Assembly: GCA_048013815.1 (NCBI GenBank)
Contig: CM106585.1
Span: 16,988,001 to 17,052,000, forward strand
From: Setoptus koraiensis
Taxonomy: Eukaryota; Animalia; Arthropoda
Length of the DNA stretch: 64,000 nt
Direction of reading: 5' to 3'
Below are positions 5,695 through 21,861 of this stretch, one piece after another (position 1 is the stretch's first letter; each line of letters opens with the position of its first letter). Both the position numbers and the translations under genes were made by a program. The notes below the pieces were generated by a model, which was given only the letters and a program-made list of their open reading frames with translations, was not told the DNA's origin and made no database searches.

Positions 5695-8529
5695 ATGACT
5701 ATCAAGATCACAATAAAGACCTTGGACTCAAGAAATTATGATTTCGAAGTGGAGGATGATCTTACTGTGTCGCAGTTTAAGCAAAGAATTGAGCCTTCTG
5801 TCAATGTCTCTGCCAGTGAACAAAGGTTAATCTTTTGTGGTCGAGTACTTCAAGATAATAGCAGGCTACTAGATTATGATTGCCACGGCAAAGTCATTCA
5901 TCTTGTACAAAGAGCTCCACCTTCTTTGAGGAATAACGGAAATGATTCAATAGCTGCCAATGATAGTAATAACAATAATGACAACGTGCAGGATCTATAC
6001 TTGAATGGTCAAAACCAGCCTAGATTCCGTCTTTTGGGTGATGACATTGTTTCATTTAGTGCAATGACCCTCTCACCTGATGGTGCTATAGATGCCGACA
6101 CAATGCGTCAGATAATCCAGGGTCTTCTAACTTATGCCAACCAAAACAATATTTCTAGAATATTACCCGATGGGCCATCTGTAGAGTTCAATAATGGCTT
6201 GCCCACTAATGATGTCCAGAGACGATTGCTCAATGCTGGCCGTATGTTAAGATTCACTTTCATTGCGATCGATGAGTGTAGAAGACAATTGAATGCATTA
6301 GAGGCTCTGGCAACTGGCAGGGGCCCGAACTTGAACCTCTCGACTCAAGAAATTCCAAATATTCCTACATTGGAATTCGTTAACAATGAACGTCTAGATT
6401 CGGTTTACAATCAACTGCTGGAGAGTCTCGCTCAAGCTGAGGATTTGTTTCGACCTTTGTCAGCGAGACATCGCGAAATGCTCAATCTATCAGTGGCCAG
6501 CACTACTACTGACAGTAATCAACAGAACTCTATGACCCCTCAAGTTCCGCATTCGTCCCATCAAGAACCATCAACTTCCAGCCAACCATCTGTGTCGGAT
6601 GAATCACCTCTTGAGTCCAAAAAAGAAGAACCTAGTGAGGACAATCAAACTCGACCTGCGATATCTGAGAGAAGCTATCAAGAGGCACGGATTCTTTGCC
6701 GATTTGTACCAAGAATTTTGCATCATCTAGGTCACGCGTGCCACGCCCTAAGTGACTTTTCTACGGATCTCAGACGGCAATCTACAACAACAAATAGTCA
6801 CAATGTTCATCAAGAGACAGTTCAGATGGTGGGAGTGCCCGCTTCCGGTTTACCTATTCCACATGTCTCTTTTGGCTTTGGACCGATACCGTTGTCTAAT
6901 GTTAGAGTGCATTCTTCCACATCCAGTTCGTCAAATAACGAGACTAATAATCGAGTTCAGGGCCAAGTAACAGTGAACTTTGAATCACCACGACAAACTA
7001 CTGGGCAAAATCGCCCTGAACAAGCTTCATCAGAGCAGACACCCTCAGGATCGGGGCCTACAGCACCATCATCAACTGGACAAGTACCATCTGGACCAAC
7101 ACCTACAGAACAAGCACCGTCAGGACAAGCACCGTCAGGACAAGCACCGTCAGGACAAGCACCGTCAGGACAAGCACCGTCAGGACAAGCACCGTCAGGA
7201 CAAGCACCGTCAGGACAAGCACCGTCAGGACAAGCACCGTCAGGACAAGCACCGTCAGGACAAGCACCGTCAGGACAAGCACCGTCAGGACAAGCACCGT
7301 CAAGACAAGCACCGCCAGGACAAGCACCCATAGGACAAGCACCATCCGGACAAGCACCGTCTGGGCAAGCACAGACCCGGAATGTACCTCGTGGTAGACG
7401 GCAACCAGTGGGTTTAATCTCCGGGAATATACCCACATCCGATCCATTTGATTATTATCTTCCATGCAATTCTAGGTGGGCTAGACCTGTGATGCCTCAG
7501 AACAGAACCAACAATTCTGGAGATAGGCAAAGAACGGGATCAGAGCCGCCTTCTGTTGTAAGACAGACTCAATCCGCGAATCAAGCCACCGCTCCCCCGA
7601 CCTCTCAATCGGCGCCCAGACAACCCAACGCCCCCCTCAACCAGCAAACTCAAACAAGGCCTACCTCAGTAAATACTAGTATTGGACATATACCTATAAA
7701 TCTAGGTGGTCTCATTGAGAACGCTATGAACTCTTTCATGTCAGCGGCGAATGGCCAGCAAAATAATTCTACTACTAGAACTCACAATATAAACATTATT
7801 CAGAACCTTGGTGTTATCCCGGAAATCGCCAGGAATGCAGCTAGTGCTGCGGTTAGTCAGTTTTTCGCGGCGGCTACAGCAAATCCGACGGCCACCGTTG
7901 CCAATGATCAGTCGAGTCGTCCATCAGCTCCAAGCATGCCTGATCCAGTAACTCCTCCATCCAGAGTGGACGTCAATGTTGAAATGATGGATCTTGATAA
8001 CGATTCAAGCACAGACAATTTCGTGGATGCCTCTGATAGTAGACCACAGCAAGTGACAGGAAACAGAAGTCCTTCGCAACAACCAGCATCAAGCCGTTTG
8101 CACATGCATGCCGAGGCTTTGAACCGAGTTATCGAACGCCATCAAGGGTGGTTACCCATAATAGAAGAGGATATTCGTATACAGGAGCGTCTCATCTCAC
8201 TGGAAAATAGGCCCCTGAGCGATGGTTATATAAATTCCGTTCCCAAGAAAAAGAGGCGATTGTTGGCAATACATTCTGAGTCAGCCTCCATTCTTCAACC
8301 TTCTTCATCACAGTCAATAGAATCACTGCTAATGCGAGCAATCAATTCAGCTAACATACCTAACCAAGCAAACTCGTCAATGATGCCTATCATTTCAGAA
8401 TTGGCTGCTGACCCTGATGTTCAAGTTGCTTATGACGCTCACATCCGGAACGCTGTTGGACAAAGGCTGAGGAGCGACTCGGATTACAACCCAACCAAGT
8501 TTGAACATAGTAACATATATTTCAAGTAG
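5695..8529 (+). CDS. BAG6: BAG6/Scythe: N-terminal UBL, low-complexity middle, C-terminal NLS and BAG-similar domain
   Basis: Intronless 944 aa ORF. UBL (IKTLDSRNYDF...EQRLIFCGRVL). C-terminal WLPIIEEDI...LSDGYINSVPKKKRR and RSDSDYNPTKF match the BAG6 C-terminus. Confidence 0.92.
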   Translation: MTIKITIKTLDSRNYDFEVEDDLTVSQFKQRIEPSVNVSASEQRLIFCGRVLQDNSRLLDYDCHGKVIHLVQRAPPSLRNNGNDSIAANDSNNNNDNVQDLYLNGQNQPRFRLLGDDIVSFSAMTLSPDGAIDADTMRQIIQGLLTYANQNNISRILPDGPSVEFNNGLPTNDVQRRLLNAGRMLRFTFIAIDECRRQLNALEALATGRGPNLNLSTQEIPNIPTLEFVNNERLDSVYNQLLESLAQAEDLFRPLSARHREMLNLSVASTTTDSNQQNSMTPQVPHSSHQEPSTSSQPSVSDESPLESKKEEPSEDNQTRPAISERSYQEARILCRFVPRILHHLGHACHALSDFSTDLRRQSTTTNSHNVHQETVQMVGVPASGLPIPHVSFGFGPIPLSNVRVHSSTSSSSNNETNNRVQGQVTVNFESPRQTTGQNRPEQASSEQTPSGSGPTAPSSTGQVPSGPTPTEQAPSGQAPSGQAPSGQAPSGQAPSGQAPSGQAPSGQAPSGQAPSGQAPSGQAPSGQAPSGQAPSRQAPPGQAPIGQAPSGQAPSGQAQTRNVPRGRRQPVGLISGNIPTSDPFDYYLPCNSRWARPVMPQNRTNNSGDRQRTGSEPPSVVRQTQSANQATAPPTSQSAPRQPNAPLNQQTQTRPTSVNTSIGHIPINLGGLIENAMNSFMSAANGQQNNSTTRTHNINIIQNLGVIPEIARNAASAAVSQFFAAATANPTATVANDQSSRPSAPSMPDPVTPPSRVDVNVEMMDLDNDSSTDNFVDASDSRPQQVTGNRSPSQQPASSRLHMHAEALNRVIERHQGWLPIIEEDIRIQERLISLENRPLSDGYINSVPKKKRRLLAIHSESASILQPSSSQSIESLLMRAINSANIPNQANSSMMPIISELAADPDVQVAYDAHIRNAVGQRLRSDSDYNPTKFEHSNIYFK
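7111..7365 (+). repeat. 15-bp coding minisatellite CAAGCACCGTCAGGA (QAPSG)n in BAG6
   Basis: 12 identical units (7111-7290) followed by 5 diverged units, read directly from the sequence. Confidence 0.98.
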
Positions 8530-9103: not shown

Positions 9104-12100
9104 TCAGCCTTTTTGGGCCGAGACGGTGTTCTGAACGCAACAACTCCGAGCAACGGATTCGAAGAGCCTAAAATAAATAGATATGACGATAACAGATGGG
9201 AGAAATAATAGTTAATATGAATGAAAATTAGCTCGTGACTGTGTAAAGTGCGTACTCGCTCATGAATCTTCTTCTCTACTTACTTTTCTATCTCTGGGGC
9301 ACACCGCACAAACTCGTGATTCCAAAACTTGAAGATGGGATTCTTTATAAGTTCAATAAAAGTTACTAGCAGGCCCCATGGGTGTGGCCTCATGATAATT
9401 AGTCGTTCAACCAAAACTCGAGTTATTTGTTCTTGAATCTGATTCATATTCGCTTCGGCGAACAAGTATAGCAATGCAGAGCTGAAGTAGTGGGTATGCG
9501 AGTTGGGGTATCTTAGTTGATTGGCGATGGCATTCAAAAGAAGATATCTTCCCTCAGTGTCCAAAGTTATAGCGAGATGGTGGAAAATGTCTATGTGGGC
9601 TGTGTTGGCGATACTAGACATTGTAATCGGTCTGGGAGCGATAGCGTTTATAGCTGACTGGCCAACGTATAAAACGACTGCGTTCAGCAGTGGAACGTTG
9701 AGCGATTCATTGGATGATGCCGAATCAGCCACATTAACAAGATACTGTGGTTTTGCCCTGAGATAGAAAGCCAATATGTTAGGGAAACCATGAGGTGTCC
9801 TAGTTCGTAGGTAAATATCGAGCTCATCTTTGAATGTTATCTGATTGAATATGTTAAGTTGAATCGAGCTTGTTTTGGGTGGTTGTGACATTTCAGGCAA
9901 CTGTTCCATCTTCAGATTTGGTGTGAACGGGTCGGGAAGTCGCATTTTTCGCGGGAAAGCACTCAGTACCAAGTTCCGCATTTGTATTGCATTACATGGT
10001 ATGACATCACATAGACTGTAGCAATATTCGCAGAGGAATTCCGGAAAGTCATGTAATAGAACCAAGAATACCTTGAGAGTTCCTTTATAGAGCAAATCAA
10101 CAGATGGTGGTAGTTCGACGTTGCGTAGGAAAGGCGCTTCAAATTTCACCAAATCTATGAGGAGTTGAGCGTAAAGTGCCCATCCTCTGGTGCGATTGTT
10201 CGGGAAGCCATTCAAACATTTTTCGGCGAATATTCGATGTGCCAGAAAATCTAACCAAGCAAAAGCGAATGATGGTACCTTGCTGGGTCTTAGAGTCCGC
10301 AACGTTTTGCAAAATTGGTTCAATACCTGGAATTGAATGTTTTCAGTAAGCGCATCTAAAGTGGGGTTTAATTGATTGAAATTGAACGAAGCTTGAGTTG
10401 GTATCCCTAGAGAAGAAGGTGTAAGTGTAAGCTCTATGAATAGCAATATCAGGATGCGGTAGTAAGCTAGATGCTGAAATTCCGCTTGGCGTGACTCTTG
10501 GTCTCTTATCGCGACCGAAGCTATGATGGATAGTATCTTGGAGAGCAGATGTATTTTTGCAGTTGGTCCAGGTGAACCGCTTGATGGGCTGGAAGAACCA
10601 GAATTCTTGATCAACAAGACAATCAGATGTGTGAAGGCATCCAAAGTGCCATAACACTTGTTTCTGAGGTCAAGAGAATTAAAACCATTCTGAGTTTGAT
10701 TAGCAAATAAGCGATAGCAGGATTCGACGCACATCTCGGTCGAGAGACGAAAGAATCTTGTTATGAGGTCATCAGTCTTGAGTATACCATGTGCATTCAT
10801 TTGTTGAACGAAAACAGGAAACATTTTGGTTGCATGAGGCGAGGTTTGATAAATTCCAATCCATTCACGCAATAATCGTTCTGTCTTTTCAATTAAACCT
10901 GGTGGATCACCATCAGCAGTCTCGCGCTGGAGTGCAATATTGAGGCTAGAATTTCCCAGTTGATTCTGAGGACTGGCATTTGACAGTTCAGTGAAAGCAT
11001 TAGAAGACTGCAGCACCGTATTGTTCTGAGATACGTAACTGGACGGTGTATGCCTACTACTCGATTGAAGTGTTTCCAGGCAGCTTTGAATTTCCAACAA
11101 AAGACCCGGACTAGCAACAGATTTGAGCCTTGAAAGCAATTCAACTGTCTTCGGTAAGCTTGACTCAGAGAACGAACCACCGAATCTGTGAATAAATCGT
11201 ATTACAACAGAAGGATTCATGGATTGTTCGGTCACTCTGACGAGTTCTTCATCGAAAGTTGCAGAATTTGTCAAGTTATTTTGTACAAGATGGTCCAGGA
11301 ATATCTCTGGTCCAGTAGACTTTTTCAGGTCGTGAATGTTGCTTATTAATTTGCTCCAAGCGTGACGAGTTATGTGTCTCGTTGTCGGTACAAATCCAAA
11401 GGTTTCGGCCAGTGCTTTCAGGAGAAGCATATGTAGCTCGCGACCTCGGCAGATTGTATTGTAATCTAGAGTAGTGGTGTAATCGAAAACCAATTCATAC
11501 ATAGAATCCAGTATTTTTGAAATAAGTAATTTATAAGTTCTGTCTAGTGGATTACTTCGCATAACACCGAGCAATTGTATTATTTGAGCTGTGTTACTTG
11601 CTAAAGTTGGGGCTGGTAGAGATTGTACGAGTTGTTGCAATTGAGGAACAAGTTCGCTCAGAAGTTCCTCCAAGAAGCTCATGCTGGTATCAGTGTTTGC
11701 GACACTCGGTGTAGTGGCGGTTTTAGGTTGGTCTCCTAGTAATTGTGAGAAAGCTGGGAGTCTTTCGGGCTGAGGAGCAAATTGGTTCGGAGTCATGACT
11801 CTTGATGAGAACAGTTGATTCACCAGGCTGTTTGCTGTGGTAGCGTTTAACGGACTTCCACTCCGAACATTGTTAGAGGGCGCGTTCCCTAATAGAATAT
11901 TTGACGTAGATGATGCGCTACTTACAGTAACATCTTTGAAAGGTGAGTTAGTGTTCAGGCTGGGCATAGGTTGATCTATGACTGCGTTCTTTGGTTTTTT
12001 GAAACCGGAAATATTTTGACCTAATTCCTCGTACATACGCAACTGATCTTGAAGTATGGGTCCAGTCTTCAGCCTTATTGGCTCTGGTATAACCTTAGTA

Positions 12101-13852
12101 TGATAGGCCAAAACCTCTTGATCGCAATAATGACGGCCCTCGGCTTTAGCATTGCGCCGAAGTTCATATTCATTCTGGAGAAGTTTGTCAAGTTCAGAAA
12201 CCGCTTTTTCTACAGCAGTTTTGATGATGAATGCGCGTGCAAGATCTAGGTTATCTTTGGCAATGACTGTTGCCGCATGATCTGACTGCTCGATTGGGAT
12301 GCATGCGCTGGCTCTGCTGAAAGCCATTTTTATGTTTGCAGATAGAGAGGTTTCGAGATGATCAGTGTCTCTGCAAGAAATCATCGCCATGTATGATACG
12401 AGGTGCCTGATTAGATAGTGTGCAGCTATACCCATACGGTTTTCTTCAGGGTCCAATGCAAAGTCTTTCTTGACAATCTGTTCTGCTGTTGATAAGCATA
12501 TTTTAAGAGATCTTTCAAGTACAGCTGGCAGCCATTCTGAGATAGCTAGCTCTATGGCAGGTCTTACAGCAGACCGCAAACCAGGTTGCAGGTTGAAAAT
12601 AGTCAAGCTAGGGTGTATTGTGATTAATGAATGAAGACTACTAGTATTAGTCACATCCAACTCACTGTAATTGAACTTACTGACCCAAGTCACAGGTGCT
12701 CGCTCGACTGTACAGGGTAGCACCGTGCCAAGCGGTCCTATGACCGAGCTAGTGACAGGTTGTGAGGCCATTGACGTCAGTGGTGGCGTTGTTAGTGGAG
12801 ACAAAGAGGAACCGAATTCATTTTGTCGCATCATGATTGAGTTGATTCCAGGGGTTATATGCTGTTGAGAGGCGGGAACTTGTGGAAGTGATGAAGCTTT
12901 GAATGCATGTTGTTGTTGGATTGTTTGCATTGTCTGCTGTGTAGATTGTTGTGTCTGTTGCTGTTTTCCACCCAATTGACATTCAATTCGTGAGTAATAC
13001 TTCTCATCATTCAAGATATTGCTCTGGCCGACTAACCTATTTAAATCCATGTTGAGGTTATTGAATAAAACCTCAACTTGGAACTCTAAATTTAGTTTCA
13101 GATTCGGCTGCTGTCTTAATTCGACCAATGCTTTTAGTAGTCCTAGAACAAATGGGTTGGTAGGCTTAAAAATCTTTGATTTTTGAGTAGTCCTCAGTAT
13201 CTCGGCCAGAAACGGGACAACGTATAACAACTCTTGTGTGCCCTTATGGTATGCCTCAACAAGCAAACCTTTCAAGTCAAGATCGACATGAAGGATGGGT
13301 TTATTACGGGCAAGAGTGAGAAGACCTAACCATTGTCCCAGGTTCTTAAGTAAAGTTCGGTCGCTAATATTGTCAACCTTCTTATCTATTCTTAAGAGGA
13401 GCTTGATGTTGCGGTAGGTTTCCCTCGTTATAACTTCTATCAATTTTGGTATCTTCAGCTCGTACAGGAAAATCGCGTACAAGGGCTGAAAATTTTGTTC
13501 CAGAGCGGCTCTTTTGGTCGAGAAATATTGAGCTATCCATCCATAATAAGTATCGTCGGTTCCGAAGAGCTCTTTGAACTCTTCGGCTTTCTGTTTTAGA
13601 TTCATCAATGATAAATTGTTGATAATGAAGAAGACTTTGTCTTGGACATACTCAGGAGGTGCGGGATAATTTGCAGTGCTGCCAGCAGCTAGCAGGTTGT
13701 CTATATTAGCATTATTAGCGATCGAGGGTCTGGTCGCAACGGGTGCAGGGGGCCCTCCAGTAACAACGCGTCGTTGTTGAGCCTGTTGATGAGTTTGGAG
13801 TTGTTGTAGAGGTTGTTGCTGCTGCAGAGGCTGCTGAAGTTGCTGCTGCTGT

Positions 13853-13884
<32 letters not shown>

Positions 13885-15972
13885 TTGCTGCTGCTGTTGT
13901 TGTTGTTGCTGTTGTTGTTGTTGTTGTTGCTGTTGTTGTTGTTGCTGCTGCTGTTGTTGATGCTGCTGTTGTTGTTGTTGCTGCTGCTGTTGTAGTTGTT
14001 GCTGCTGTAGTTGTTGTTGCTGCAGTTGTTGTTGTTGCAGTTGTTGCTGTTGCTGAAGTAGCTGTTGCTGAAGTTGTTGTTGCTGGGGCTGTTGCTGGGG
14101 CTGCTGAGGCTGCTGTTGCTGAGGCTGAGGCTGCTGTTGTTGTTGGGGCTGCTGAGATATAACTTGATTCTGTATTTGCTGTTGTAAGACTTGCTGTGCG
14201 GATGGCTGTTTGACACCAATCTGATCCGGTCGAGAGAAATATTTTTCATCACTGATCATATTTGCTACTACGCCTGGAGGAGGTTGCCTTGGGGCTCTCT
14301 GCAACAGAATGGAGGAGTTACCAACCAAAGTGAAAACCTCTTTCTGCACGTTTTGAGAAATTTCAGGTAGGTTATGGTGGGAATTAGTTGAAAGGACTCG
14401 TTGCTGTAAAAATGTAAGCATCACAGCTAGAGTTTCTGCGGGTAAGCTTGGACCCCCCATCGCTATCGATCCGACATCATTCTCTTTATTTGATCCCCCT
14501 AGTAAAGATAGATAGCGCCTGTTTAGAAATGACGCGATAGCCCTAATAAAGTTTTCTCCATTCTCACTGAACTTATCCATCAGCCATTTATCCAGTTTAA
14601 GATATTCTCTTCTTGATGCTAGACAAGCTAAATCTATAACGAAGGGGTAGCATGTGCCATCGAGCAATCTGAATAAGGTTTTGATATCTTGCGCTACATC
14701 CAAAATTCGTGATAGCCGTTGTTGCTGCTCTTCAGGTGATGATTTGATATAATGATCACAAAGTGCATGAAGGAGTGCTTGCTGTGACCACGACAACGGA
14801 GTGCTTGGCTTTTGTTGATTTGGAGCAATACTAGAGGATTCACACTGTAAGTTACTATTCCAGATACTATGCAGTATAATAGCCGCATTAGGATGAGATG
14901 CATTAAGAAATGAAGGTATGGCCATACTGAGTATTTCAGACTTAGCGGCTGATGTTTGACCAGAGACACCTAACAAACCTAAAACAACAATATCGGGGCA
15001 ACTTTGAACAGGCCATCTAAATATCTCCAGGACCCGACCGTAGCAAATATTATTGGATTGTAGATTCGGTAGATTGCCTGGTATAGTAAAATCAATGAGA
15101 ATCTGATACAGCCGCTGGAACTTCCAATTCTTCAATCCTGGCAGAGAGTCGAAATCTGGATGGCATTTTAGCAAGTCATAATATTGAACTTGTTGACCGA
15201 TATTGGGTGTGCCTGCTTGTTGCACTGAATTGGAGAGTTGAGGTTGGGTTAATAATTTAGCAATCAAATTATGTTCGATACAGTTGGCAATGAAGTTGAA
15301 TTGAAAATCGTGATTGTGTTGCCAAATTTTGCTGAAGAAGGCACTCCCAATTATGTAAGGTCCAAGCTTATGTGACGAGGCTAGATTCATGAAAAATTGC
15401 CAGAAATGTTGAAAGGCGGTTGATGGCGATGATGATATGTGCTTGCTAGCAGGTATTGTATAAGAGGTATTCCTGAAAATTCTATCACTTATAAAATCCT
15501 CATCATCAAAGGCATGAAGTAGTTCATGAATTGGCGATGACAAATGTTCGCGGCAGATATCTGCAAACAAATCAATTTCCTCACTCCTATTGGATGTATC
15601 TATACTGGACGTTACTGATGATTGGCCGTGATTGTTACTTGATGGCGATGTCGCCTGTTGGTCATTATCTTGCTGTAGATGAAGTAATGAGGACATCGAT
15701 CCACTACTTGACATTCCGCTGTTATTGGTATGTAAGGGGGAGTTTGATTTTTGTGGTATCTCGCACAATGCACACAATATTTTGCAGGCCAACTTTGGAG
15801 TAAAATCAAATTGTCGAAGTATTTCGACATTGAGGTGGTTATTGCCAACATTTTCGTTGACTACCAATGCCGCTATCTGCGTCTCCGTTAGCGACAAATG
15901 GTTCGAGTTTGGATCAATGGTGGTCATAGTTGTATGGTCCCCAATATGATGATCCTCATATTTCAACCACAT
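9104..15972 (-). CDS. CNOT1: CCR4-NOT scaffold subunit 1, lacking the TTP-binding domain
   Basis: Exons 15972-9284 and 9167-9104 (phase-2 intron; joined ...APEIEK|LFESVARSCC). Motifs DLACLASRREYLKLDKW, CAF1-binding MIF4G (KVFFIINNLS), DUF3819, and the NOT1 C-terminal domain (RPHPWGLLVTFIELIKNP). Start may be the later MTTIDP codon. Confidence 0.96.
13780..14185 (-). repeat. CAA/CAG polyglutamine tract in CNOT1
   Basis: Gln-rich block of ~130 codons, including 40 uninterrupted Gln codons at 13840-13959. Confidence 0.97.
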
Positions 15973-16670
15973 GAACTAATAGAGTTTGTATTTTGTATTA
16001 TTAATGGCTACCAATAATAATAATAATGTCTGTGATAATCTCGGGATAGTGATTGATTATAAAATAATACAGATTTTGTGTGTGTATATATCTTCTATTG
16101 TATATAATTATGTGTGATTATAATAATAATAATAATAATAATAATACATATGCTACCAACAAAAAATAGATAATAATAATATGCGTTGTAATTACACGAC
16201 AGTGTCGTAAATGGATGTAATAGCCCTAGATAATTACATATATATATAATTAGAATGTATCAAGTGGCTGGAGCTCTCTTGTGGTTATACGCGAGTGATG
16301 TTATAAGAGCACGACAGCAGAGAGAAATACAAATGTAATCAAAGGTCTGAAAAATAATAGAACGCGAACCACCAATCGGTGCACCGATAGAAGAAAGGGA
16401 GAAACGGCGAACGAGAGGGGAATTTTGTCAATTCAGGGTGAACAAAAACTTTTGTATGTTTCACCCGATAAAGAGCATGTGATATTGAGGATCAAAATAA
16501 AGTGTAAGTCTGTCGCTAAAATCGCAAATCTGTGCAAAAAAATCTACTCCAATGTGCACGCATTCGCTCGTAACTCCGGCGGTTTATTCGAATTTTTCAA
16601 GTTTTTCCCTGCTGATTCAGTTAGAGTTTGCAACAATGTATACCAAAGTTATCTCGTGATCAGTATGCGC

Positions 16671-16743
16671 GGCCTTGTAGTATAATGGACATTACGCCTG
16701 ACTACGAATCAGGAGGTTCCAGGTTCGACCCCTGGCAAGGTCG
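16671..16743 (+). tRNA. tRNA-Arg-ACG: tRNA-Arg (anticodon ACG)
   Basis: Cloverleaf: acceptor GGCCTTG/CAAGGTC, anticodon stem CCTGA/TCAGG with loop CT-ACG-AA, T-arm CCAGG-TTCGACC-CCTGG, D-loop AATGG. No intron. Confidence 0.95.
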
Positions 16744-16751
16744 ACGGCTAC

Positions 16752-16756
16752 TTTTT
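16752..16756 (+). terminator. RNA polymerase III terminator (T5)
   Basis: TTTTT 9 nt downstream of the tRNA 3' end. Confidence 0.8.
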
Positions 16757-18039
16757 GCCGACTTATATCTAGAAGTTCTTTTTCATTTTCATTCATTCAT
16801 CTTATGGCTCACTTCATCTTTCTTTCCACTAACAATTGTACTTTTAATTCTATCTAATATTATATGGTATTTTTACAACTTGTTCGAAAAATTGGTAATT
16901 TTGACCGCGGCTATTCTATCACTACTATATCATCGCCCCACACTCAGTAGTATAGCGTCCGCTAGCTAAAGTCAGCTACTCACTTCCATAAGCTCCAATG
17001 CCCAGCCAACTAGCAAACAGAAACCTTTTTAGCGCGCAATCTCGCCTATCTCAAAACTAAAGTGGCGCTGCCTAGATAGATGCACATAGTTGCGGGGAGT
17101 GCGTGAACTAGAGCACACAAGCTAGATTTTACATGGAAAAAAAGAATGAAAGTATGCTCATACGCAACATCAAAGCTTGCCCACCGAAGGAAGAAGTGAT
17201 CCAGTGCGCAAGATTGTAACTTATGGCCAGGCTAGCTAACGGATTGATGAGCAAGCAGCACAAGTCTATAGCATGGAGACCCGTATCAGTCTTATCAACA
17301 TCGAGCTCCCTAAATCGAATGTTGGAGCGAATGCAGCATACATCCAGAGAGCAACCGTGTATATGTAATAGTTTGGATATTCTCTGTAGCTCGGCACTGT
17401 ATAAAATCTGAGGATGCACACAAAAATACACAAGCACATAGACACACAAGCACACAGGTCGAAACTGCGACGATGGTGCGACTTGATGATTCGCAAATCC
17501 AACTAAATTGTTGTACGTTGCGTCACAAGTGCATCAAGCTATGATTGCTGTGTTACGTCAGTACAAGCTGTGCCAATGCGCACCACTTGTCGTGCCATGT
17601 GCAATCATTATGCATATAGTCGTAGTCACACTAAAGCCATTGGAATGTGTCTAGATGGTTGGCACAAATAATATAATTGGCACACTTTGTACCAGTGAGC
17701 AGTGTCAGAATGGCGAACTGCACTATTCTCTGTTACGCTAAAAGTCTACGAGAGAAAGAAACATGATGGTCACACTCACTAAAACTCGCTCAACCACTAA
17801 CGCGCTTGTGTACGTTACATCTAGTTCGCTGAGTGCTTGTGTGAGCAACGAAATGTATGCCCACGGCTGCATTCATAACGCTATCATGCTTGCCTTCTTT
17901 ACCATCAACCATTCCAGTTTCTTCTCCTTCTCTTCTAGTGCTTGTGAGATTATCAGGAGCCTTTATATTATTGGGTGCCTGTGTACAATTGAAGCGATCA
18001 TTCGCATATATTTATACAAGATGCAATTTAATTCCTAAT

Positions 18040-18370
18040 TATCAATTATATATCTATCACTATTTCGCTGGACTATATATTATTATAATTTTATATATAT
18101 CTATATATACATATATATGTATATTATATCTAAATATATCTATATATAAATATATAATTATGATCACTTTTAGTATTATCACATTATTATTACTATAATT
18201 GATATTATTATTATAACCACTAAAACAATCATTATTGCTACCCAAATACGGACAATTATTATTATTATCACTGGCAACTATTATTATAACTATCACTATT
18301 ACTACTGTACAATTATATTGACATTGTTGATACGTTGCCACTACGATAACTACAACGCATTTTAACAACT
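18040..18370. repeat. Very AT-rich low-complexity (TA/ATT) tract upstream of the CBP-like gene
   Basis: Runs of TATATA and ATTATT visible throughout. Confidence 0.85.
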
Positions 18371-18435
18371 GTTACTATTACCAAAAACACTAAAGTAAAC
18401 AATCTTTCTTCCATGTTGATACTAAACTTATTAAC

Positions 18436-21400
18436 ATGGAAGAGAGAATATCCAAGGAATTCTTACCTGTATTGGATAAACTCTACAATGCTGAGCCAGC
18501 TGGTGGCCCATTCAGGAAACCTGTCGATCCTGAATTGTACGAGTGCTACGACTATTATCTCAAAATAAAGCACCCAATAGATCTGTCTACCATCAGGGAG
18601 AAGCTCAACAATCGCAAATATGACGATGCCTGGAGACTTATCGCAGATATTAATCTCATGTTCAACAACGCGTGGCTGTTCAACAAACGACAAACCCCCG
18701 TTTACGAATACACTACCAAACTTAGTAAATTGTGGCAACAAGAACTTTCACCCGTTATGCAACGTCTTGGCTACTGCTGCTCAACACTCCACAGATTCGG
18801 ACCACAATTATTATTTTGTCATGGTACAACAACAGACCGTTACTGTCAAATTGCTGTTTCAGCTCGATACAAGTGCTATAATGATCAATATTCATATTGT
18901 ATACCTTGTTTTTCAAAAATTGAATCTAATTCAGTACAAATTCAGGATTTTTCTTCAGAGACTCCTCGAGGGGAACTTCCGTCACAACCGATAGATAAAG
19001 ATAAATTTGTCGATTGTACTAATGACCAGTGGCAATATGAAAGCTTTGTGAAGTGTGTTAGTTGCTCAAGACGAGTACATCAAGTTTGCAGCCTTTATCC
19101 AGCATCTGACGAAGAGATAGAAAATTGTATTCAGCATGCTGATTTGGAGCAGCAACAAAAAGATCAGTGCCAAGTACCGGAACAATTTAGATACTTGTTA
19201 GACCCAGATGTAGTGAACGAGAAACTTATAAATCTTAAAAACAGGAGGCAATCATGTAATGGTGCTGTGTCCTCCAAGAAAGCACATAACATTAATAAGA
19301 ATCAACAAAATCACGAGCAGAAATTGTTCGCCGAAAAAAATCCCTCGCGAAAATCAATCACCCAATACAAAAAAGAAGAAGGAATTAAGGAAAAAGAGTC
19401 TCATCAATTAACAAGCTTTATCAACTCTCTTGTTAATCCAAACTCAAATGAAGCCCAAGTTACTTCATCTTCACTTGACGACGAGCTGTTGGCTTTTGCC
19501 CGCGACGCGGCCGATAAACACCTTACTATTTCTGCCCCGACATCACCAGCTGCTCCTCATAGTTCTGGAGACTCAAGTATAAGTTTCAGCTCATCCGATG
19601 TCATTTCAACTACAAGCTGCGATTTCCTCAAGAGAATAACGGAAAAGGCTGAACCCAGTCTTACAAATACAAGACGTGATAGATTTTTGTGCAATCTCTG
19701 CTGCAATCAACAAACTTATGGTCGCGAGAATAGGCACCGCAAATGGAGTGCTCGCAGAATACAACAAAGCAGGATGTCTAGATATATAGAAGTTAAAGTG
19801 AACGAGTTCATTAAAAGCAGCGCCCCATCTGCTGGACCTATAACAATTCGAGTTCTTGCTGCATACAATGATAGGGTCGAGGTTAAACCTCAGATGCGAA
19901 ATTATGTTCAGCATTGTGCTGCAACTGACAAGCATCCTTTTTCAAAAGACTATCCAGAAGAATTCAAATACACAAATCGTGCCATATTTGCCTGGCAAGA
20001 AATAGATGGTGTGGACGTATGTGTTTTCGGCATGCATGTTCAAGAGTATGGCGTTGATTGTCCTGAACCCAACAAGCAAGTTATTTATCTGTCTTATTTA
20101 GATTCTGTGCATTTCTTCAGGCCCAAGGAGTATCGGACTGCAGTTTACCATCAAATACTTCTGTCATATTTTCGCTATGTCAAGAAACTAGGTTTCTTAC
20201 GGGCATTCATATGGGTGTGTCCTTCAAGGAAAGGAGATGACTATATTTTTTACCGCCACCCAACGGAACAAAAGATGCCAACTCTCAAAAGGCTTTCTGA
20301 TTGGTATGTCGATTTACTCGATAAAGGTATTATAGCCGGTGTAATCGAGCACCATCAAAACATATATCAATATGCGAACTCTCAAAATTGGAAATCCATA
20401 CTCAGCATGCCTTACCTTAGTGGTGACTACTGGCCAGGCGAATTCGAAAGACTTCTTAAGATTAAAGTAGAATCTCAGAGAGAATATGATGAATTCAAAT
20501 CAGCCCAAGATCGTACAACGAATGATTTAGACTTCGATTCCGAACTCCCATTGGATCTGAGTATAAATGCAAGTCATACTAGTCCCGAGTATTACGAGAG
20601 TGATGACAGCTCTAGTAAGAATTCATTCAGTCATGGTTTTAAAAACAATCGACGAAAGCGGAGGAAATCGAACACCTTATCAGGATATTTGAATAAAAAA
20701 AGGTATAGGATGTCGAGTATGTATCAAGAAACATCTTCCCAGAAGGATCATTCAGTTTCAGAGGCTTCGGATAGAAGCCGTGTATTAGTTGATCCAGAGG
20801 TAGAGTTTTCTCGTAGTTTAGAGAGATCACTCAAAAGGCAAAAAGAGGGATTCATAGTCGCTCATTTGAACGAATGTGATTGTTCCTCTTACTTTGAGCA
20901 GAAGCGTCGCGATGCTGAGCCCATGATTAAATGCGATCTAATGAAAGGCAGAGAGCCATTTCTGCAAACTGCCAGATTAAAGAATTATGAGTTTTCTACT
21001 TTGAGGCGTGCTAAATTTTCTAGCCTCGCCATGGTAAAACATCTTAGTCTGACATCTAAACTGACCCCACTGTGCAGCGTTTGTTATTCTTCAGACTGTC
21101 ATTCTAGCATCCACTACGCTTGCCCGACTTGCGAAGATTTCTACCTCTGTTCTTCATGTCATTTGAATACTCATCACGACCACAAATTAGAATTGACATC
21201 TCCTACTTTACTTCCGGACATTGATGACGATCATTTACAATGCTCAACCACTTCACATAAATCATCTACATCCTCCTCCTCCTCATCATCATCTACAGCT
21301 ATATCAACAAGTGTAACCTCTAAGTCATCATCTCTGTTAACATCCACATCGACACTCAAAAACAACGCAACTATAGAGAATCTCCATCACAGTACCAGGA

Positions 21401-21861
21401 GAGCCACATCATCTTTATCACATCAAGCCTTATTGCCCATACCTTCTCATCAGAATCAGGAGAAGCATAGAGCTGAAGACGAAGAAAACAATAAGAGGGT
21501 TTTATCAGACAGGCATACTATCTCAAGAGCACTAACATCTTCGCCACCGCCATCAACTATGAGCAATCCGTCGTACGAATCTTTAAATTTAGAGATCATT
21601 GGAAGTCTTATCACCCGAGCTCAAATTTTTCATGATGTTGATTTTGAAAAGATGAAAAACGAGTCTAAAGCATTGATAACCCATTACTGGTATTGTAAAG
21701 CTAAAGATAATTGCCAGATGTGCAGGTTTGTTATACTAAGTTGCAGCTTTATGAGTTTGACTCTCACCGGCCACAAACCCCCCTCAAATAATCACAACAA
21801 TAATAACAATAATAGTGGCAGTGGTGGCAACTCAAACAAATCCTCAGGCATAATGAACTAA
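18436..21861 (+). CDS. CBP: CBP/p300-family (KAT3) acetyltransferase core: bromo-RING-PHD-HAT-ZZ-degenerate TAZ2
   Basis: Intronless 1141 aa ORF. Bromodomain (PFRKPVDP..FNNAWLFN), GYCC linker, HAT motifs YLSYLDSVHFFRP, TAVYHQIL, IWVCP..GDDYIF, DWY, PYLSGDYWP, EFSTLRRAKFSS, and ZZ finger. Confidence 0.93.
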   Translation: MEERISKEFLPVLDKLYNAEPAGGPFRKPVDPELYECYDYYLKIKHPIDLSTIREKLNNRKYDDAWRLIADINLMFNNAWLFNKRQTPVYEYTTKLSKLWQQELSPVMQRLGYCCSTLHRFGPQLLFCHGTTTDRYCQIAVSARYKCYNDQYSYCIPCFSKIESNSVQIQDFSSETPRGELPSQPIDKDKFVDCTNDQWQYESFVKCVSCSRRVHQVCSLYPASDEEIENCIQHADLEQQQKDQCQVPEQFRYLLDPDVVNEKLINLKNRRQSCNGAVSSKKAHNINKNQQNHEQKLFAEKNPSRKSITQYKKEEGIKEKESHQLTSFINSLVNPNSNEAQVTSSSLDDELLAFARDAADKHLTISAPTSPAAPHSSGDSSISFSSSDVISTTSCDFLKRITEKAEPSLTNTRRDRFLCNLCCNQQTYGRENRHRKWSARRIQQSRMSRYIEVKVNEFIKSSAPSAGPITIRVLAAYNDRVEVKPQMRNYVQHCAATDKHPFSKDYPEEFKYTNRAIFAWQEIDGVDVCVFGMHVQEYGVDCPEPNKQVIYLSYLDSVHFFRPKEYRTAVYHQILLSYFRYVKKLGFLRAFIWVCPSRKGDDYIFYRHPTEQKMPTLKRLSDWYVDLLDKGIIAGVIEHHQNIYQYANSQNWKSILSMPYLSGDYWPGEFERLLKIKVESQREYDEFKSAQDRTTNDLDFDSELPLDLSINASHTSPEYYESDDSSSKNSFSHGFKNNRRKRRKSNTLSGYLNKKRYRMSSMYQETSSQKDHSVSEASDRSRVLVDPEVEFSRSLERSLKRQKEGFIVAHLNECDCSSYFEQKRRDAEPMIKCDLMKGREPFLQTARLKNYEFSTLRRAKFSSLAMVKHLSLTSKLTPLCSVCYSSDCHSSIHYACPTCEDFYLCSSCHLNTHHDHKLELTSPTLLPDIDDDHLQCSTTSHKSSTSSSSSSSSTAISTSVTSKSSSLLTSTSTLKNNATIENLHHSTRRATSSLSHQALLPIPSHQNQEKHRAEDEENNKRVLSDRHTISRALTSSPPPSTMSNPSYESLNLEIIGSLITRAQIFHDVDFEKMKNESKALITHYWYCKAKDNCQMCRFVILSCSFMSLTLTGHKPPSNNHNNNNNNSGSGGNSNKSSGIMN

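What the first reader, a model, noticed from the sequence alone, without database searches (positions are those of the whole stretch)
13660..14340. CNOT1 TTP-binding domain replaced by a polyglutamine tract
Seen: one frame runs from ...RQPPPGV (end of the N-terminal region) through ~130 Gln-rich codons (40 pure Q) to RPSIANNANIDNLL and the CAF1-binding MIF4G. No DEANSYFQRIY/FFPQYP-like segment lies between. Known: that HEAT-type domain (human ~820-1000) binds tristetraprolin and contributes to GW182 contacts, and is conserved from yeast to human. Inference: AU-rich-element decay recruitment is rewired, and the polyQ may act as a spacer or promote condensates.
Basis: partly seen in the sequence, partly recalled or inferred. 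Interest (0 to 1): 0.75.

Follow-up and report, generated by a model that had tools for sequence, protein, structure and literature searches.

The report
Mite CNOT1 without its TTP-docking domain
The main scaffold protein of the mRNA tail-shortening machine (CNOT1) in this gall/rust-type mite and in all 24 of its closest relatives has lost the small domain that normally docks tristetraprolin and GW182; the long glutamine run is a later, local addition to the leftover linker.

Summary
Window 9280-15972 (minus strand) is one intron-free 2230-aa CNOT1 gene. Pfam finds CNOT1_HEAT, the CAF1-binding MIF4G, DUF3819/CN9BD and the Not1 superfamily homology domain. It finds no CNOT1_TTP_bind (PF16417), even at E<=10 on the isolated linker. 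The Tetranychus control scores 1.4e-73.

Between PPPGV and PSIAN lie 190 residues, 113 of them Gln, including a pure Q40 run.

All 24 closest relatives (an eriophyoid-type clade within acariform mites) also lack the domain. They bridge the gap with a 64-76-aa linker that has no polyQ. So the domain was deleted in the clade's ancestor, and the polyQ is a later expansion in this lineage.

All 26 other acariform CNOT1s keep a 152-155-aa domain. Assembly collapse is therefore not the explanation, although short-read contigs do not span the Q40 run.

No second CNOT1 carrying the domain was found, but the test was indirect. The state of Tis11 and of the GW182 motif in this genome could not be tested.

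Published work shows that TTP recruits CCR4-NOT through several redundant contacts, which makes the loss plausible.

I rate it a new variant of a known kind, of moderate interest. This scan has already noted similar domain losses elsewhere in this genome.

The parts
9280..15972 (-). CNOT1/Not1 orthologue, a single intron-free ORF of 2230 aa. The likely true start is Met16 at 15927, by alignment with the relatives' N-termini.
14404..14937 (-). CNOT1_HEAT domain (PF16418), aa 346-523
   Evidence: 6.8e-30; confidently folded in the AF2 model
13714..14283 (-). Linker from PPPGV to PSIAN, aa 564-753. It sits where other animals have about 150-200 aa of low-complexity sequence plus the 153-aa TTP-binding HEAT domain.
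13774..14154 (-). Q-rich core, 104 Q in 127 aa, with mixed CAA/CAG codons. It is an expansion specific to this lineage and absent from the 24 relatives.
   Evidence: close relative X8 also has a repeat here, with an in-frame 24-nt insertion at 13772
13840..13959 (-). Pure Q40 run, aa 672-711. Its length is not confirmed by independent contigs.
13000..13668 (-). CAF1-binding MIF4G domain (PF16415), aa 769-991
   Evidence: 7.6e-72
12145..12585 (-). DUF3819 / CNOT9-binding domain (PF12842), aa 1130-1276
   Evidence: 3.8e-36
9283..10353 (-). Not1 superfamily homology domain (PF04054), aa 1874-2230. This is the NOT2/NOT3-binding part.
   Evidence: 2e-122

Best explanation
This is the CNOT1 scaffold gene of an eriophyoid-type (gall/rust) mite.

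Shown: in the common ancestor of the sampled clade, the 153-aa HEAT-like domain that carries the TTP/GW182-CIM1 docking groove (human 800-999) was deleted, together with most of its low-complexity flanks. What remains is a roughly 60-70-aa linker, predicted to be disordered, between the CNOT1_HEAT domain and the CAF1-binding MIF4G.

Shown: in the lineage of this window, which is sister to the other 24 sampled relatives, that linker later gained about 115-130 extra residues. They are almost all Gln, encoded by mixed CAA/CAG codons.

Inferred: the expansion arose by replication slippage. It is tolerated because the segment is a flexible tether.

Shown in the sequence: all module-docking parts are kept (MIF4G for CAF1/CCR4 and DDX6, CN9BD for CNOT9, the superfamily homology domain for NOT2/NOT3). 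Inferred: the deadenylase complex therefore assembles normally.

Inferred: what is lost is one peptide-docking site. If TTP/Tis11-type and GW182-type adaptors are still used, they must recruit the complex through their other, redundant contacts (NOT module, CNOT9 tryptophan pockets).
For: Gene identity and domain content:
- Searches show the four conserved CNOT1 domains and no PF16417.
- One search gives the positive control (Tetranychus 1.4e-73) and nothing for the window's or P0010's linker at E<=10.
- hhalign of the linker profile against the domain profile gives probability 0.05%.
- the AF2 model folds the HEAT domain and the MIF4G confidently, with low-pLDDT segments and Q-rich helices between them and no globular domain.

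The loss is clade-wide:
- the 24 best hits (76-88% identity) all lack PF16417, and every other acariform hit has it.
- the relatives carry 64-76 aa between PPPGV and PSIAN within one continuous ORF, while other animals carry a 152-155-aa domain there.
- the 25 domain-less rows form one clade (support 100*) inside Acariformes, with the window's protein sister to the rest (99*).
- the orthologues lie on 94-kb and 35-kb contigs. Both have CDC37 beside CNOT1, and the 94-kb one also has the core-only CBP/p300 gene nearby, as the window does.

The polyQ is secondary. One search adds that a relative about 95% identical also has a repeat here, with an in-frame 24-nt difference.

No paralogue was seen:
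- One search shows no in-clade hit with the domain.
- of 57 metagenome loci that encode the domain, none comes from the metagenome holding the 94-kb eriophyoid contig.

The loss is plausible: in PMC12350847, deleting TTP's CNOT1-binding motif gives only modest relief of repression, because TTP also binds the NOT and NOT9 modules.
Against: - No RNA data were available, so expression of this exact form is inferred from the intact ORF and its conservation.
- Short-read contigs do not bridge about 126 nt of the Q40 run.
- The search for a second CNOT1 in this genome was indirect. It relied on protein-database hits and one metagenome, not a whole-genome search.
- Whether Tis11/TTP and the GW182 CIM1 motif still exist in these mites was not tested, so the functional consequence is inferred.
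Confidence: 0.82

Rival explanations
1. Assembly artefact: the repeat collapsed in assembly, and the missing domain is encoded by sequence lost inside the CAA/CAG tract.
For: Short-read contigs from three studies end inside the repeat and leave about 13869-13994 unbridged. A collapse of a trinucleotide repeat would keep the reading frame.
Against: Twenty-four orthologues with no repeat at this site read straight from PPPGV to PSIAN in 64-76 aa, with no domain. Any hidden sequence would have to lie within a pure Q run. The codons are mixed CAA/CAG, and the tract is in frame on both sides.
Confidence: 0.02
2. Subfunctionalised paralogue: these mites keep a second, complete CNOT1 with the TTP domain, as reported for their CBP/p300 and as in Plasmodium NOT1 versus NOT1-G. 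This gene would then be a specialised copy.
For: Plasmodium has one NOT1 with the domain and one without (PMC8562791). The genome itself could not be searched here.
Against: - Among the hits listed, every sequence of the eriophyoid clade lacks the domain.
- The domain-bearing acariform sequences fall into ordinary mite subclades, mostly from soil or other metagenomes. None forms a clade that mirrors the 24 eriophyoid samples.
- The metagenome with a 94-kb eriophyoid contig yielded no domain-encoding contig.
- This gene keeps all the core docking domains and is the only CNOT1 noted in the genome.
Confidence: 0.07
3. Functional replacement: the polyQ tract took over a role of the lost domain, as a length-restoring spacer or as a condensate-promoting module that recruits Q-rich partners.
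For: The tract lies exactly at the deletion site. It uses mixed codons, so it is not a fresh pure-CAG slippage product. A close relative shares it. AF2 draws part of it as long helices. GW182 condensates recruit CNOT1 through this region in vitro (bioRxiv 10.64898/2026.07.16.738963).
Against: - Twenty-four relatives function with a 64-76-aa linker and no polyQ, so neither spacing nor Q content is required after the loss.
- The tract varies in length between close species.
- The AF2 helices have no alignment support.
- No experiment or covariation bears on the idea.
Confidence: 0.09

Closest known systems
Human CNOT1(800-999) HEAT-like domain bound to the TTP C-terminal peptide (PDB 4J8S; also present in 8FY3; yeast equivalent in 4B8B)
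   Same: The rest of the protein is a clear orthologue of the same scaffold. The flanking CNOT1_HEAT and MIF4G domains align residue for residue.
   Different: The whole domain that forms the TTP / GW182-CIM1 groove is absent here and in the entire clade. The domain is otherwise 152-155 aa in every arthropod, mollusc, brachiopod and chordate row examined, and it is recognisable in yeast at 5e-28.
Predicted bee CNOT1 'isoform X4' (Megalopta genalis, Halictus rubicundus, Lasioglossum baleicum; P0073, P0077, P0078)
   Same: These CNOT1 forms lack exactly the PF16417 segment and keep all the other domains.
   Different: In bees it is one predicted splice isoform beside full-length forms. In these mites it is the only form an intron-free gene can encode. 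The mite deletion also removes the flanking low-complexity linkers.
Plasmodium NOT1 (no detectable TTP-binding domain) versus its paralogue NOT1-G (PMC8562791)
   Same: It is a NOT1 scaffold with no detectable TTP-binding domain. Experimental deletion of the domain in NOT1-G is tolerated for most functions.
   Different: Plasmodium is a protist with two NOT1 genes, one of which keeps the domain. Here an animal clade shows no sign of a second copy.
Other domain losses in eriophyoid genomes
   Same: The theme is the same: conserved multidomain regulators are simplified by loss of single domains in a streamlined, intron-poor genome.
   Different: CNOT1 and CCR4-NOT are not mentioned in the two eriophyoid genome papers I searched.

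Membership tests
CNOT1 / Not1 scaffold of CCR4-NOT | C-terminal Not1 superfamily homology domain (PF04054), which binds NOT2/NOT3 | tested here: met
   2e-122, aa 1874-2230, profile positions 11-366 of 372
CNOT1 / Not1 scaffold of CCR4-NOT | CAF1-binding MIF4G domain (PF16415) | tested here: met
   7.6e-72, aa 769-991; folded with pLDDT above 90
CNOT1 / Not1 scaffold of CCR4-NOT | CNOT9-binding domain (DUF3819 / CN9BD, PF12842) | tested here: met
   3.8e-36, aa 1130-1276, full profile length
CNOT1 / Not1 scaffold of CCR4-NOT | Orthology: nests with animal CNOT1 sequences in a tree, and the neighbouring genes are shared with relatives | tested here: met
   clade inside Acariformes; CDC37 beside CNOT1 in both relatives' contigs; the core-only CBP/p300 also nearby in the 94-kb contig, as in the window
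CNOT1 / Not1 scaffold of CCR4-NOT | TTP-binding HEAT-like domain (PF16417, human 800-999) | tested here: not met
   control P0031 scores 1.4e-73. This domain is typical of the family but is not what defines membership.
CNOT1 / Not1 scaffold of CCR4-NOT | N-terminal CNOT10/11-docking domain (CNOT1_1st, PF22940) | tested here: inconclusive
   It is not detected in the window's N-terminal 345 aa or in Tetranychus, but it is detected in tick and bee. It is absent from the precomputed Pfam lists of all acariform hits. The region exists and aligns among relatives, so it may simply be diverged.
TTP/ZFP36-CNOT1 docking system (CIM peptide in the 800-999 groove) | A groove-forming domain on CNOT1 | tested here: not met
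TTP/ZFP36-CNOT1 docking system (CIM peptide in the 800-999 groove) | A Tis11/TTP orthologue with the C-terminal CNOT1-interacting motif in the same genome | not testable with these tools
   Only the 64-kb window can be read. No tool gave a Tis11 query sequence, and the scan's notes hold none.

The most novel reading that the evidence does not exclude
A whole superfamily of animals works as a natural knock-out of the CNOT1 800-999 docking groove. I propose that Tis11/TTP has in step lost its C-terminal CNOT1-interacting motif and GW182 its CIM1 motif, or that both motifs were retargeted.

The deletion may have been fixed when a cDNA of an exon-skipped isoform, like the bee X4 form, overwrote the gene during the reverse-transcriptase-mediated intron purge of eriophyoid genomes.

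If so, this would be a direct evolutionary test of how dispensable this adaptor site is, and an example of intron loss fixing a splice isoform.
Probability: 0.2. Interest if true: 0.65.

Novelty: new variant of a known kind. Interest (0 to 1): 0.45.

Why it matters
The 800-999 domain of CNOT1 is treated as the conserved docking site for tristetraprolin. A 2026 preprint also makes it the site for GW182 CIM1, and a review makes it the site for RESIST proteins. It is 152-155 aa in nearly every animal sequence examined here and is recognisable in yeast.

A clade of animals that has removed it from what appears to be its only CNOT1 supports the recent biochemical view that adaptor recruitment is multivalent and that this site is dispensable. 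It also gives a natural system for asking which motifs in Tis11 and GW182 co-vary with the site.

It adds one more case to the pattern of single-domain losses in streamlined eriophyoid genomes. The polyQ itself appears to be incidental.

Tried and rejected
- Remnant of the domain. MAFFT placed the relatives' 'YNR' and 'EVDKLQ' under 'YFQRIY' and 'ALDRFK' of the domain. hhalign gave probability 0.05% over 4 columns, so I claim no remnant.
- Reads across the repeat. Only Logan contigs were on offer. They stop 69 nt into the repeat from the low-coordinate side and 148-161 nt from the high side, and no RNA run was listed. The tract length and expression therefore remain unconfirmed.
- Paralogue search by sample. 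I looked up P0013 and P0047. The sample accessions differ, and without a run-to-species map this route was uninformative, so I dropped it.
- First tree attempt. MAFFT --auto timed out. I redid it with FFT-NS-2 and FastTree, so support values are SH-like only.
- Tis11/TTP and the GW182 motifs. There was no route without typing sequences from memory, so I left this out.
- The large representative-protein search was not used. Its top 150 hits would be ordinary CNOT1s and could not show absence in this genome.

Full report
THE OBSERVATION

The window carries one ORF on the minus strand, 9280-15972, of 2230 codons. Pfam identifies it as CNOT1/Not1, with these domains:
- CNOT1_HEAT, aa 346-523
- CAF1-binding MIF4G, aa 769-991
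- DUF3819/CN9BD, aa 1130-1276
- Not1 superfamily homology domain, aa 1874-2230

CNOT1_TTP_bind (PF16417) does not appear at E<=1. As a control, Tetranychus urticae CNOT1 (P0031) hits PF16417 at 1.4e-73. The isolated linkers of the window's protein and of relative P0010 hit nothing relevant at E<=10.

The stretch from PPPGV to PSIAN is aa 564-753 (window 13714-14283). It has 113 Gln in 190 residues. The core has 104 Q in 127 residues (13774-14154), and there is a pure Q40 run (13840-13959). The core uses 56 CAA and 48 CAG codons. No other ORF of 100 aa or more in the window has a run of six or more Gln.

WHAT THE RELATIVES SHOW

A word-indexed protein search with aa 340-1000 returned 24 close relatives (76-88% identity over the best local alignment). 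They are unnamed and come from Logan, ENA and JGI assemblies. Every one lacks PF16417 in the precomputed annotation. The next hits all carry it: Dinothrombium, Leptotrombidium, Tetranychus, Oppia and unnamed acariform mites, followed by ticks, spiders, insects, molluscs and vertebrates.

In alignment, the relatives go from PPPGV to PSIAN in 64-76 residues. The consensus reads roughly ...ANDYNRxDRLxGF..DRP..SEVDKLQAEFEAKRLAQR..., with no polyQ. Other animals have 150-200 residues of low-complexity sequence plus a domain of 152-155 residues there. One relative, P0020, has a short Q-rich patch at the same end of the linker.

The relatives' genes are single continuous ORFs on contigs of up to 94 kb. 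On these contigs CDC37 lies beside CNOT1, and on the 94-kb one the core-only CBP/p300 gene is nearby, as in the window. No exon can therefore be hidden in them.

A FastTree phylogeny on 1477 columns puts the 25 domain-less sequences in one clade (support 100*) inside Acariformes. The window's protein is sister to the other 24 (99*). The 26 domain-bearing acariform sequences form the sister group.

So the domain was lost before the deepest sampled split of this clade. The polyQ arose afterwards, on the window's branch.

Earlier notes of this scan call the genome an eriophyoid (gall/rust) mite. My data are consistent with that: placement within Acariformes, intron-free long genes, and a partial holder among phyllosphere metagenomes. 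I did not test the species identity directly.

IS ANYTHING LEFT OF THE DOMAIN?

MAFFT aligned short linker motifs under the first and last helices of the domain. A profile-profile comparison of the linker alignment (A2) against the domain alignment (A1) gave probability 0.05% over four columns.

AlphaFold2 on aa 340-1000, with a 41-row alignment, folds the HEAT domain and the MIF4G with high confidence. About aa 562-627 and 711-753 fall below pLDDT 50. Part of the Q/L-rich tract is drawn as two long helices. Those helices have no alignment support and should not be trusted. There is no cryptic globular domain.

ASSEMBLY AND EXPRESSION

Only Logan contigs could be laid on the stretch. In three studies they match the flanks perfectly but stop 69 nt into the repeat from one side and 148-161 nt from the other. 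That leaves about 13869-13994, inside the Q40 run, unbridged.

A relative about 95% identical (X8) also breaks in a repeat here. It differs by an in-frame 24-nt insertion at 13772. The tract length is therefore unconfirmed and probably variable. The absence of the domain does not depend on it, because the repeat-free orthologues lack the domain too. No RNA run was listed.

A SECOND CNOT1?

I could not search the genome itself. The indirect evidence is against a second copy:
- No in-clade protein carries the domain.
- The domain-bearing acariform hits form ordinary subclades, not a shadow of the 24-sample eriophyoid clade.
- A scan of JGI metagenomes with the domain profile found 57 loci. None comes from the metagenome that holds the 94-kb eriophyoid contig.
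- The scan's own notes list no other CNOT1, although a blank there proves little.

I give the paralogue rival about 7%.

WHAT THE DOMAIN DOES, AND WHAT ITS LOSS MEANS

The domain profile matches PDB 4J8S (human CNOT1 800-999 with the TTP peptide), 8FY3, and yeast Not1 in 4B8B at 5e-28. The domain is therefore ancient.

A 2026 preprint maps GW182 CIM1 to the same groove and shows that it competes with TTP there. A 2025 review notes that RESIST proteins bind the same region.

On the other hand, PMC12350847 reports that deleting TTP's CNOT1-binding motif relieves repression only modestly. TTP's disordered regions also bind the NOT module and NOT9. In Plasmodium, the canonical NOT1 has no detectable TTP-binding domain, and deleting it from NOT1-G is tolerated for most functions. 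Bee genomes have predicted CNOT1 isoforms (X4) that skip exactly this domain.

The most likely reading is that the mite complex assembles normally and that one redundant adaptor-docking site was discarded in a lineage known for genome streamlining and domain loss (PMC7738191). Neither that paper nor a 2026 eriophyoid genome preprint mentions CNOT1.

Whether Tis11 and GW182 in these mites have lost the matching motifs is the interesting open question. I could not test it with the tools available.

THE POLYQ

The polyQ is confined to this lineage and its close kin. It sits in a segment predicted to be disordered, and the relatives do without it. A neutral or nearly neutral slippage expansion is the economical explanation. 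A spacer or condensate role remains speculation.

VERDICT

- I rate it a new variant of a known kind, of moderate interest.

Noticed in passing
P0073, P0077, P0078 (bee CNOT1 'isoform X4'): Predicted halictid bee isoforms skip exactly the PF16417 segment (about 175 aa) and keep every other CNOT1 domain. This suggests the TTP-binding domain is a splice cassette in Hymenoptera.
   Followed up: partly
window 14938-15972 (aa 1-345) and all acariform hits: The N-terminal CNOT10/11-docking domain model (CNOT1_1st, PF22940) is not detected in any acariform mite CNOT1, including Tetranychus, but it is detected in ticks and insects. The region may be diverged, or this module may also be altered in mites.
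   Followed up: partly
window about 10400-12100 (aa about 1290-1860): The window's CNOT1 gives no hit to NOT1_connector or ARM_Cnot1 at E<=1. Relative P0010 hits them weakly (37-48 bits) and Tetranychus well (103-129 bits). The connector region is unusually diverged on this branch.
   Followed up: no
window 9280-21861 versus L001 7793-22799: In the relative's contig the order is CDC37(-), CNOT1(+), an AIP-like PPIase(-), then the CBP/p300 core(+). In the window, CNOT1 is inverted relative to the CBP/p300 core gene, and a BAG6-like ubiquitin-domain gene (5695-8529) lies beyond its 3' end. This points to a local inversion or rearrangement between lineages.
   Followed up: no
P0020 aa about 620-636: Another relative has a short Q-rich patch at the same C-terminal end of the linker, so Gln expansion at this spot is recurrent.
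   Followed up: no
window 15927-15972: The ORF's first ATG lies 15 codons upstream of the Met that aligns with the relatives' N-termini (MTTIDPNSN... against MNQIVIDPNQ...). The true start is probably Met16.
   Followed up: partly
window 13701-14252, minus strand: The 183-aa GTG ORF listed here is only an alternative frame running through the CAA/CAG repeat. It is not a gene.
   Followed up: yes
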